A stretch of DNA of 64,000 nucleotides from Haliotis cracherodii (GCF_022045235.1 NW_027266298.1:1550001-1614000), one strand, 5' to 3'. Counted from the stretch's first letter, positions 19,383 to 20,855 are shown. A program made the numbers and translations. Notes: generated by a model from the sequence alone, not told the origin.

Positions 19383-20855
19383 TCACTCGCCTACCCTTGA
19401 GAGGGACCTAATCTCAATTTCACTAAGATCCATCTGGTAGTCTCTATTCCTTTCAATGTCATAAAGCAGGTGTTTATTCCTGTGAATTTTCTCTGTTAGT
19501 ATTAGACGAAGGGTTACTTTAAAGGCATCTGGATCCTCTGGGGCGAAAGCTCTGACACAGTTAGTAAGGTCGTACTTTTTTTCTGTAACCTTGTAATGTT
19601 GATGGTTTGCATCCCAGTACAGTTTGACATTAAATGTCCAATGTTTCTTCATTAAATGAAGCTCCTTTTTGTGTCGATCTTCCCACACACAATGTACATA
19701 GGGAGGTAGCCACGTGAGATCATAAGGGCTCATTTTCGAAGAAGACTGGGAATCCTTCTTGACGAGTTTAGGATGAACATCAACAGTGTCAACAGACCCA
19801 GAACTAACTGGGCACTGATATTCCTCTGGGACCTGGGCGAGTAGAATGTCCGTCTGTGACTGTTGCTCTGCCCAACTAGTGGATGCAGAACGATCCTCAG
19901 AATCACTGGCAACTTTTTTCCTCTTATCAACTTCATCAGGTAGATCCTGCGCGCACTGCTTCCTTTTTGGAGGTAAAACTTGTTCAGATTCCATTGCTTC
20001 CTCCTCAGACTCAGATGAACCCATGTCAGAACCGGCTGATTGACTGTCCTCACTAGCAATGTCTTCAGGCACAGAAACCACATCTGTTGTTTGGTTATCC
20101 ATCATATCAGTCACAGGCTCCGAATCAGAAACTCCACTAGCATGGCCATCAATCACGTCATCAGGTACTTTTTTCACCATGTCAGTATCGACTTCAACAA
20201 TAACAGGGGCCACAGTAGGTTTTCCAGTAGAATGAGTGGGTATATCCGTACCTGGACAACGAGCACGCACATGTCCAACTGAGTGGCACTTCAGGCAGAT
20301 AGGTAAGCGTCCCGGTGCAGTTACAAGCATGGATTGCTTGTCACCAAACCGCACTATATGGGGTATGCACGTACGTTCAGACTCTGTCAGCTCCATCCTT
20401 ACAATGCGAATTCCAGTGTATATATTCACTCCATCCACATCCACGAATTCTCGGAAAGCATCCAACACTTTGCCATAGCGGCTAAAAAAATCCTTCAAAA
20501 AATCACTGGTGACTGTGGCATGCAGCCAATGGATCCTTAATGGAATCATAAAGACACCATACGCATAAAAGTACAGTTTTTCAGCACCATGGGTAACACA
20601 GTTCAAGTCCAAGAGTTTCTTGGCCGTAGACACAGATGTTAAGGTTACATATACTTGACCTGCACGTTCTGTTCTCCATATGGCCTGGCAATCAGGCAAT
20701 GACAAGTCAGGAACAACAGTTGTCAGCAGTCGAGCAAAGTCCGGAACTGTAGTGAAACGAGCAGTGGAGTAAACCCTCACAGTCCTGGATTCAACCTCCT
20801 TGTCAACGAATTTGTCAGGGACTGGTCCAGCGTTGACAGACGAGTTGTAAGCCAT
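19383..20855 (-). CDS. H1 ORF1 protein with extra C-terminal domain (490 aa, intact)
   Basis: LRIHWLH, FFSRYGKV, VTAPGRLPICLKCHSVGH; acidic linker; C-terminal about 110 aa homologous to the H2 protein only. Confidence 0.9.
   Translation of the reverse strand: MAYNSSVNAGPVPDKFVDKEVESRTVRVYSTARFTTVPDFARLLTTVVPDLSLPDCQAIWRTERAGQVYVTLTSVSTAKKLLDLNCVTHGAEKLYFYAYGVFMIPLRIHWLHATVTSDFLKDFFSRYGKVLDAFREFVDVDGVNIYTGIRIVRMELTESERTCIPHIVRFGDKQSMLVTAPGRLPICLKCHSVGHVRARCPGTDIPTHSTGKPTVAPVIVEVDTDMVKKVPDDVIDGHASGVSDSEPVTDMMDNQTTDVVSVPEDIASEDSQSAGSDMGSSESEEEAMESEQVLPPKRKQCAQDLPDEVDKRKKVASDSEDRSASTSWAEQQSQTDILLAQVPEEYQCPVSSGSVDTVDVHPKLVKKDSQSSSKMSPYDLTWLPPYVHCVWEDRHKKELHLMKKHWTFNVKLYWDANHQHYKVTEKKYDLTNCVRAFAPEDPDAFKVTLRLILTEKIHRNKHLLYDIERNRDYQMDLSEIEIRSLSRVGE

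What the first reader, a model, noticed from the sequence alone, without database searches (positions are those of the whole stretch)
19383..19730. Unrecognised ~110-aa C-terminal domain specific to the ORF1-only elements
Seen: H1 PYDLTWLPPYVHCVWEDRHKKELHLMKKHWTFNVKLYWDANHQHYKVTEKKYDLTNCVRAF...LRLILTEKIHRNK...MDLSEIEIRS aligns with H2 (49347-49695) PFDLTSFPVYVNPRWQEEHKKGLHLLRKKWTFLVKLFWDEARGCYKVTEKKYDVTNCVRSF...VRLLLTLKVHQNK...MSLTEEEIRS. More than half the residues are identical by eye, in contrast to the divergent acidic linker, and the domain is absent from all five autonomous ORF1s. I do not recognise it. Inference: a captured module that may recruit ORF2p or host factors, or suppress the autonomous elements.
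Basis: partly seen in the sequence, partly recalled or inferred. Interest (0 to 1): 0.8.

Follow-up and report, generated by a model that had tools for sequence, protein, structure and literature searches.

The report
Orphan tail domain of ORF1-only LINEs
Two short jumping genes in an abalone U2 snRNA gene array encode an RNA-binding protein ending in a compact, roughly 105-residue folded domain that matches no known protein family or solved structure, and that occurs only in a group of parasitic elements lacking their own copying enzyme.

Summary
H1 (19383-20891, minus strand) and H2 (49347-50888, minus strand) share a C-terminal stretch that is 50% identical over 114 aa (E 6e-34). Their acidic linkers are about 21% identical. 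No other reading frame in the window matches the stretch.

The genome is black abalone. The window is a U2 snRNA array packed with Tx1-clade (Keno-like) LINEs.

The domain folds confidently (AlphaFold2 pLDDT 89) as an alpha/beta unit. I found no Pfam, PDB-sequence, Foldseek or VIA match (best Z 4.0), and none in two very large protein searches. This genome holds about 17 copies in seven lineages, all ORF1-only and nearly all flanked by U2. H. asinina has a relative.

The domain is under purifying selection (dN/dS 0.13-0.42, against 0.05 for the N-terminal core and 0.54-0.75 for the linker). It is inherited together with the linker and 3'UTR as a 3' module that recombines onto different N-terminal cores.

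All ORF1-only proteins form one clade. That clade also contains U1-targeted families whose C-terminal tails are different and unmatched.

"Captured" is unsupported, because I found no donor. Function is inferred: most likely an adaptor for borrowing a partner's ORF2 protein.

It is a new variant of a known kind (HAL1- or HeT-A-like parasites), of moderate interest. The scan had already noted the ORF1-only elements on this same window.

The parts
19386..19727 (-). H1 C-terminal domain (aa 377-490). The folded part is about 19398-19721. The stop codon is at 19383-19385.
   Evidence: 50% identical to H2. AlphaFold2 pLDDT 89, pTM 0.81. No family or fold match.
19569..19640 (-). Best-conserved core of the H1 domain: beta hairpin WTFNVKLYWD...KVTEKKYD.
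   Evidence: Invariant columns in alignment A1. Strands E37-47 and E52-57 of the model. Coordinates.
19728..20255 (-). H1 acidic linker (pI 4.2), with KRKQ at 19956-19967 and the SWAEQ motif at 19863-19877.
   Evidence: dN/dS 0.54-0.75.
20256..20855 (-). H1 N-terminal ORF1 core ending in the CCHC knuckle CLKCHSVGHVRARC (20256-20297). It is homologous to ORF1 of the autonomous elements.
   Evidence: tblastn E 1e-39 to 1e-50 against the autonomous ORF1s. dN/dS 0.05. Tree.
19163..19382 (-). H1 3'UTR and A-rich tail, ending at the U2 junction GTATCTGTTCTT (19162 downward). The tail carries the CGCTGTCCGC...TGTA motif shared with most of the other element tails.
   Evidence: U2 hit at 19006-19216.
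19163..20990 (-). Whole H1 element (ORF1-only, about 1.83 kb), inserted in tandem behind another element.
49350..49691 (-). H2 C-terminal domain (aa 369-482). The stop codon is at 49347-49349.
49350..50795 (-). H2 ORF1 (482 aa from its ATG). CCHC knuckle at 50199-50240, SWADQ at 49893-49907.
   Evidence: U2 flanks at 48875-49066 and 50899-51021.

Best explanation
The stretch encodes a compact alpha/beta domain of about 105 residues at the C-terminus of the ORF1 protein of ORF1-only, U2-snRNA-gene-targeted LINE derivatives of the Tx1 clade (Keno-like). Its predicted order of elements is: an extended N-terminal strap, two short helices, a beta hairpin, two helices, a third strand and a final helix. 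Shown: it takes the place of the basic, ...DPP-ending tail of autonomous ORF1 proteins. It is an orphan by sequence and by predicted fold. It is kept by purifying selection. It belongs to one monophyletic clade of ORF1-only elements. It travels with the linker and 3'UTR as a 3' module that recombines onto different N-terminal cores. Inferred mechanism: these elements have no ORF2, so they must borrow the endonuclease/reverse transcriptase of the neighbouring autonomous LINEs. The ORF1 core coats the element's own RNA, and the C-terminal domain acts as a protein-protein adaptor that brings this particle to the partner's ORF2 protein (or its RNP, or the snRNA-gene target). The shared 3'-terminal RNA motif then supplies the priming site. 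The domain's fast divergence and module swapping would reflect matching to different partners.
For: The domain is real and conserved. It folds confidently: pLDDT 89, with four of five models at 86.9 or higher. Every copy is ORF1-only, with the snRNA 3' part 150-260 bp after the stop and no ORF2. Twelve of about 17 copies have intact frames. dN/dS in the domain is 0.42, 0.20 and 0.13 in three lineage pairs, against 0.54-0.75 in the linker and 0.05 in the core. The N-core tree puts all 15 ORF1-only proteins in one clade (UFboot 95, SH-aLRT 92), away from every autonomous ORF1. The U1-targeted ORF1-only families nest inside the U2-targeted ones (100/97), although the U1-array autonomous ORF1s are the most distant rows. 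So the clade changed partner ORF2p without taking the partner's ORF1. The module structure shows in nucleotide identity: H3 vs L046 is 81-91% over the first ~700 nt and then about 35%; H1 vs H3 is ~60% in the 5' half and 70-78% in the 3' half including the 3'UTR; H1 vs H6 is ~80% in the 5' part and unalignable in the 3' part. Eight of the nine U2-junction tails in the window carry the motif CGCTGTCCGC...TGTA...(A)n (one with a single mismatch) before GTATCTGTTCTT; the tail at 463 lacks it. The H6 and L045 3'UTRs share their last ~110-130 nt at 84-92% with autonomous families A-D. Domain pI ranges from 5.2 to 9.6 between lineages, which argues against a generic nucleic-acid-binding role.
Against: There is no direct evidence of any interaction. 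No co-folding or expression data could be obtained: the RNA-like runs held none of the sequence and the read-laying run was used on DNA contigs. The partial list of H1-like differences in two related species gives pN/pS of about 0.75 in the domain against 0.13 in the core. Constraint on the H1 lineage's domain may therefore be weak. Sister ORF1-only families (L044-L050, P0004, P0006) have C-tails that the profile does not recognise. Either the domain is not needed in one form, or it has diverged beyond detection. A 3'UTR shared with the partners could be enough for trans-mobilisation without any adaptor.
Confidence: 0.4

Rival explanations
1. The domain is a second nucleic-acid-binding or chaperone module. 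It functionally replaces the arginine/serine/lysine-rich basic tail that autonomous ORF1 proteins carry at the same position.
For: It sits exactly where the basic tail sits in autonomous ORF1s. It is basic in H1-H5 and in P0005 (pI 8.2-9.6). The conserved surface-type motif KVTEKKYD is charged.
Against: The H6 version is acidic to neutral (pI 5.2-6.5) and lacks the two basic N-terminal helices, yet it is intact and multicopy. There is no resemblance to RRM, KH, dsRBD, zinc-knuckle or L1 CTD folds.
Confidence: 0.25
2. The domain is a self-association (oligomerisation) module. It would give a Type I ORF1 protein, which has no coiled coil, the multimeric state needed to coat RNA.
For: Known ORF1 proteins need multimerisation (established for the L1 coiled coil; PMC5940361 title and abstract, listed). 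The domain is compact, and its conserved residues are mostly hydrophobic.
Against: Autonomous relatives manage without it. Nothing in the model or the searches indicates an oligomer interface.
Confidence: 0.15
3. The domain was captured from a host gene or another mobile element (a claim about origin), possibly to recruit host factors.
For: LINE ORFs are known to acquire accessory domains (PMC5203782). There is an abrupt change of architecture relative to autonomous ORF1s.
Against: No donor was found: own-genome six-frame profile searches return only the elements themselves; the 1.84-billion-protein profile search gave 0 hits; the word searches, PDB, Pfam, Atlas and metagenome scan gave none.
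Confidence: 0.1
4. The domain makes the ORF1-only protein a dominant-negative or competitor that suppresses the autonomous elements. Alternatively it is a decaying relic with no role.
For: pN/pS is near neutral in the partial cross-species H1 list. The elements sit interleaved with the autonomous ones.
Against: dN/dS is 0.13-0.42 across old lineage pairs whose synonymous sites are near saturation. Frames are intact in 12 of ~17 copies. The domain persists in two Haliotis species. A suppressor has no obvious way to spread as a multicopy, diversifying family.
Confidence: 0.1

Closest known systems
HAL1 ('half-L1') elements of mammals (from my own knowledge; the term appears in papers listed)
   Same: A LINE derivative that keeps ORF1, has lost ORF2 and must use a partner's ORF2 protein. 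It forms its own diversifying lineage.
   Different: HAL1 ORF1p is an ordinary Type II L1 protein with no added domain and inserts anywhere. The abalone elements are Tx1-clade with a Type I-like core, are site-specific for snRNA genes, and end in an orphan folded domain.
HeT-A and other ORF1-only telomere-specialised Jockey-clade elements of Drosophila (PMC13534243)
   Same: ORF1-only elements living in a specialised tandem-array niche. They depend on the ORF2 of co-resident specialised LINEs. ORF1-only lineages give rise to further ORF1-only lineages.
   Different: They differ in clade (Jockey, gag-like MHR + CCHC), in niche (chromosome ends, not snRNA genes) and in having repeated independent ORF2 losses. 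Here there is one monophyletic ORF1-only clade, and it carries a new C-terminal domain.
Keno / Tx1-clade U2-targeting LINEs (PMC4640811)
   Same: APE + RT + zf-RVT ORF2 in the neighbours. Insertion in U2 genes with the 3' junction at GTATCTGTTCTT. ORF1 has a CCHC knuckle.
   Different: H1 and H2 have no ORF2. Their ORF1 ends in the orphan domain instead of the basic ...DPP tail.
C-terminal domain (CTD) of mammalian L1 ORF1p (Pfam Tnp_22_dsRBD)
   Same: A small alpha/beta domain that follows the RNA-binding core of an ORF1 protein.
   Different: No Pfam hit at E <= 10. No L1 ORF1p chain appears among the structural matches; the best Z overall is 4.0 and goes to an unrelated family.
N-terminal domain of fold-type IV (branched-chain / D-amino-acid) aminotransferases
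   Same: The only family that recurs at the top of every structure search. It covers most of the model (residues 14-117).
   Different: Z is only 3.7-4.0, rmsd 4.7 A, 8-11% identity, Foldseek E 0.4-0.8. That is far below the tool's own noise guide (typical best Z 7-8). There is no catalytic context.

Membership tests
Tx1-clade (Keno-like) ORF1 protein, Type I architecture | Sequence homology to ORF1 of autonomous APE+RT elements of the same array | tested here: met
   tblastn E 1e-39 to 1e-50 over residues 1-213/260. The neighbours' ORF2 has Exo_endo_phos + RVT_1 + zf-RVT.
Tx1-clade (Keno-like) ORF1 protein, Type I architecture | CCHC zinc knuckle after the RNA-binding core | tested here: met
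   CLKCHSVGHVRARC / CLRCHTYGHIRSKC. Pfam zf-CCHC gives a sub-threshold hit only on a neighbouring family.
Tx1-clade (Keno-like) ORF1 protein, Type I architecture | RRM fold of the core | not tested
   No Pfam RRM hit.
ORF1-only non-autonomous LINE (HAL1 / HeT-A kind) | Intact ORF1 and no ORF2 between its stop and the element's 3' end | tested here: met
   The stop is followed by a 150-260 bp 3'UTR, an A tail and the snRNA 3' part in H1, H2, H3, H6, L044-L050.
ORF1-only non-autonomous LINE (HAL1 / HeT-A kind) | Same target site and 3'-terminal sequence as an autonomous partner | tested here: met
   All nine 3' junctions lie at GT(A/C)TCTGTTCTT, and eight of the nine tails share the CGCTGTCCGC...TGTA motif. 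H6 and L045 3'UTRs are 84-92% identical to families A-D.
ORF1-only non-autonomous LINE (HAL1 / HeT-A kind) | Mobilisation in trans by the partner's ORF2 protein | not testable with these tools
   Needs a retrotransposition assay.
L1 ORF1p C-terminal domain (Tnp_22_dsRBD) | Profile or structural similarity | tested here: not met
   No Pfam hit at E <= 10. Not among the 50 rows listed (Z 2.4 or more) of 48,161 PDB representatives.
Any Pfam-A family or solved structure | Significant sequence or fold match | tested here: not met
   Pfam: none. PDB phmmer best E 1.3. Foldseek PDB best E 0.8, BFVD best E 0.08. VIA best Z 3.7-4.0.

The most novel reading that the evidence does not exclude
The domain is a new protein fold that evolved inside a clade of ORF1-only LINE parasites as a hijacking adaptor. 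It docks the parasite's RNP onto the ORF2 protein of whichever site-specific LINE shares its niche. Swapping the 3' module (domain + 3'UTR) is what let the clade move between U2-specific and U1-specific partners.
Probability: 0.2. Interest if true: 0.75.

Novelty: new variant of a known kind. Interest (0 to 1): 0.5.

Why it matters
ORF1-only LINE parasites are known (HAL1, HeT-A), but how their protein gains access to a partner's ORF2 enzyme is an open question. Here a whole clade of such parasites carries an extra folded domain that is under selection and that autonomous relatives lack. The domain is inherited with the 3'UTR, and the clade has switched between U1- and U2-specific partners. 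That gives a small, well-defined and experimentally tractable candidate for the parasite-specific part of trans-mobilisation. It may also be a new fold. If the domain is only a substitute RNA-binding tail, the finding is a modest addition to the known variety of ORF1 architectures.

Tried and rejected
1. Known family: Pfam on full proteins and on isolated domains, PDB sequence search, two word-index searches, a profile search of 1.84 billion representatives, a metagenome scan and the ESM Atlas via the stored homologue P0005 (78) all came back empty.

2. The second model, from 9 sequences, was confident (pLDDT 89) and still matched nothing.

3. Remnant of ORF2, of the stop-free ORF1-ORF2 spacer, or a duplicate of the ORF1 core: rejected. 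Six-frame tblastn of the window finds nothing. The spacer 'ORFs' are hydrophobic low-complexity sequence. hhalign against autonomous ORF1s gives probability 0.4% (70).

4. Captured host exon: own-genome profile searches return only the elements.

5. Homology of the other ORF1-only tails (L044-L050, P0004, P0006) to this domain: not demonstrable. HMM scores are at decoy level. hhalign gives probability 9.6%, E 0.003, though in register. I therefore do not count them as members.

6. Expression: no RNA run held the sequence. Reads were laid on DNA contigs of related species.

Full report
**Setting.** The window holds nine Rfam U2 snRNA hits, all on the minus strand, and no tRNA. Between them lie long minus-strand ORFs.
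- The 1150-1170-aa ORFs carry Exo_endo_phos, RVT_1 and zf-RVT domains. These are APE-type LINEs of the L1/Tx1 kind.
- Each element ends in an A-rich tail followed by GT(A/C)TCTGTTCTT. In eight of the nine cases this runs on into U2 (...ATCAGCTTAATATCTGATAC); at 20990 it runs into the 5' end of H1 instead.
- This is the habit described for Keno, the U2-targeting Tx1-clade family (PMC4640811).
- Proteins identical or nearly identical to copies in this genome are named 'uncharacterized protein [Haliotis cracherodii]'. One sits on a contig of 1,712,936 bases, which is the length of the window's contig. The genome is therefore black abalone, as earlier scan notes also said.

**The observation.**
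- H1 (19383-20891, minus; ATG at 20855, 490 aa) and H2 (49347-50888, minus; ATG at 50795, 482 aa) align end to end.
- The C-terminal 114 residues are 50% identical (tblastn E 6e-34). Nothing else in the six frames of the window matches them; the next E is 0.2.
- The acidic linker between the CCHC knuckle and this stretch is 21% identical.
- The six autonomous-type ORF1 frames match H1/H2 only over the first 200-260 residues. They end instead in a basic tail finishing ...DPP.

**ORF1-only status.** In H1 the stop codon is followed by a 220-bp 3'UTR and A tail (19163-19382) and then U2 from position 19162. The same layout holds for every other copy examined. No ORF2 follows any of them.

**Search for relatives.**
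- Empty: Pfam, PDB sequences, the 5.8-billion-protein word index with the domain alone and as a region of the full protein, a profile search of 1.84 billion representative proteins and a metagenome scan.
- In the abalone genome, the protein and two successive profiles find only about 17 places, on contigs C35 and C5 (both U2 arrays), plus one decayed copy on C6.
- These fall into seven lineages: H1, H2, H3 (L004), H4 (L005, broken), H5 (L010, fragment), H6 (L021-L026, two sublineages) and the C6 relic. Twelve have intact frames.
- A full-length word search brought in proteins from H. asinina (sequences). Of these, P0005 is recognised by a profile built only from H1-H5 at 25 bits. H6 scores 18-22 bits. 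Reversed and shuffled decoys score at most 5.6 bits.
- Contigs from two related species hold H1-like sequence at about 92% identity across the domain.

**Structure.**
- With five sequences, AlphaFold2 gave a weak model (pLDDT 69).
- With nine sequences (A3) it gave pLDDT 89 and pTM 0.81, with four of five models at 86.9 or higher.
- The order of elements is: an ordered N-terminal strap, two short helices (21-26, 28-33), a beta hairpin (37-47, 52-57), helices 59-69 and 74-91 (plus 93-96), strand 103-110 and helix 111-117.
- Foldseek against PDB gives a best E of 0.8, and against BFVD a best E of 0.08.
- VIA-align against 48,161 PDB representatives gives a best Z of 3.7. The second look gives Z 4.0, rmsd 4.7 A over 95 residues.
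- Those best rows all go to the N-terminal domain of fold-type IV aminotransferases. The values are well under the tool's stated noise level, so I treat this as no match.
- The ESM Atlas had no feature hit, and all TM scores were under 0.5 for the P0005 C-part.
- Caveat: A3 contains two rows (P0004, P0006) whose homology is not shown by HMM.

**Selection.** Nei-Gojobori estimates:

| Region | dN/dS |
|---|---|
| C-terminal domain | 0.42 (H1-H3), 0.20 (H6a-H6b), 0.13 (H2-H5) |
| Linker | 0.54-0.75 |
| N-terminal core | 0.05 |

- Between H1 and H2, synonymous sites are saturated while the domain keeps 51% identity.
- The partial list of differences between H1 and the related-species contigs has 21 non-synonymous and 7 synonymous changes in the domain (plus a change in the stop codon), against 3 and 7 in the core.
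- That gives pN/pS of about 0.75 against 0.13, Fisher p 0.02.
- The list is truncated by the tool, so this is only a hint. It suggests that the domain evolves much faster than the core, and perhaps nearly neutrally in the recent H1 lineage.

**Modules.**
- H1 and H6 share an N-core (88% aa, ~80% nt), but their domains are about 20% identical and their 3'UTRs are unalignable.
- H3 and L046 are 81-91% identical in nucleotides over the first ~700 nt and about 35% after the knuckle.
- H1 and H3 show the reverse: ~60% in the 5' half and 70-78% in the 3' half including the 3'UTR, with dS saturated in the core but 0.6 in the linker and domain.
- So linker, domain and 3'UTR move as one 3' module that recombines onto different 5' modules. 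This reticulate pattern is already reported for Jockey-superfamily ORF1s (PMC4120745, title).

**A larger clade.**
- Searching the genome with the H1 N-core found further families at 54-61% identity. L045 and L046 lie in U2 arrays. L044 and L047-L050 lie on C32 and C51.
- In the C32/C51 families the ORF is followed by a ~150-260-bp 3'UTR, a truncated U1 and then tandem intact U1 genes. All are ORF1-only.
- In a maximum-likelihood tree of the N-core, all 15 ORF1-only proteins form one clade (95/92), apart from every autonomous ORF1. The U1-targeted ones nest inside the U2-targeted ones (100/97).
- The autonomous U1-array elements (L052, L053: ORF1 of 389-390 aa plus ORF2 of 1149-1150 aa) are the most distant rows.
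- The clade therefore changed partner and target without acquiring the partner's ORF1.
- Their C-tails are of similar length, but the profile does not recognise them. hhalign gives probability 9.6% and E 0.003, in register. Whether they are the same domain remains open.

**Mechanism.**
- Shown: an orphan, folded, selected domain restricted to ORF1-only elements; it replaces the basic tail; it is co-inherited with the 3'UTR; and most of the element tails share the same 3'-terminal motif before the U2 junction.
- H6 and L045 share about 110-130 nt of 3'UTR at 84-92% with families A-D.
- Inferred: the elements need a partner's ORF2p. The domain is the one protein feature that sets them apart from autonomous ORF1s, so an adaptor role in obtaining ORF2p or reaching the target is the most economical reading (confidence 0.4).
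- The spread of pI from 5.2 to 9.6 argues against a generic nucleic-acid-binding role but does not exclude it. Self-association is a further rival.
- 'Captured' has no support, because no donor was found. Origin is unknown; the domain may have arisen de novo or diverged beyond recognition.

**Comparison and novelty.**
- The kind of element is known: HAL1 in mammals, and HeT-A and other ORF1-only telomeric elements in Drosophila. The latter also live in a specialised array and borrow ORF2 (PMC13534243).
- New here are the Tx1-clade, snRNA-gene setting, the single diversifying ORF1-only clade that spans U1 and U2 targets, and above all the extra orphan domain.
- I rate it a new variant of a known kind, with interest 0.5.

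**Limits.**
- No expression data were obtained.
- No library of predicted cellular structures was available.

Noticed in passing
L044, L047-L050 (G000 C32:1994900-2027900; C51:234000-238200): ORF1-only elements inserted in U1 snRNA arrays. Their N-terminal core nests inside the U2-targeted ORF1-only clade, although the U1-array autonomous ORF1s (L052, L053) are very distant. This looks like a partner and target switch by a non-autonomous LINE lineage.
   Followed up: partly
window 19163-20990 vs L021-L026, L004, L046: Mosaic elements: H1 and H6 share a 5' half, H3 and L046 share a 5' half, and H1 and H3 share a 3' half. The breakpoints lie just after the CCHC knuckle, which indicates recombination between ORF1-only lineages.
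   Followed up: yes
window 19863-19877 (H1), 49893-49907 (H2); also L045, L046, L049, L051, P0004-P0006: A short motif, SWA[DE]Q followed by SQ.D..L, is kept in almost all ORF1-only families. It is better conserved than the C-terminal domain. Autonomous ORF1s have [YF][SA][EQK][VA] followed by SQ[ED]G.D.[IL]L at a comparable position. Its function is unknown.
   Followed up: no
window 4586-10813 (minus) and 11115-15670 (plus): Other, non-Keno retroelement ORFs interrupt the array here: a gag-like protein with three CCHC knuckles (8384-9418), an APE-like N-terminus (7611-8396), an RNase H-like ORF (10046-10813), and four plus-strand ORFs of 247-538 aa.
   Followed up: no
L006 (G000 C35:1512258-1515461) / protein P0001: The public gene model P0001 (417 aa, 'uncharacterized protein') is built on a broken H1 copy that is interrupted by another insertion. 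The model splices around the break and ends in unrelated residues.
   Followed up: partly
window 19006-19216 and the other U2 hits: Rfam reports the U2 hits next to the elements as covering model positions 1-192. The first ~36 positions, however, are aligned to the element's own A-rich 3' end. The U2 copies after an element are really 3' parts starting at GTATCTGTTCTT.
   Followed up: partly
L001 vs L002 (G000 C35:1540176-1543541 and 1567886-1571251): The two H1 copies are 99.9% identical across 3.4 kb including both flanks. They therefore arose by duplication of an array segment (27.7 kb apart), not by separate insertions.
   Followed up: yes
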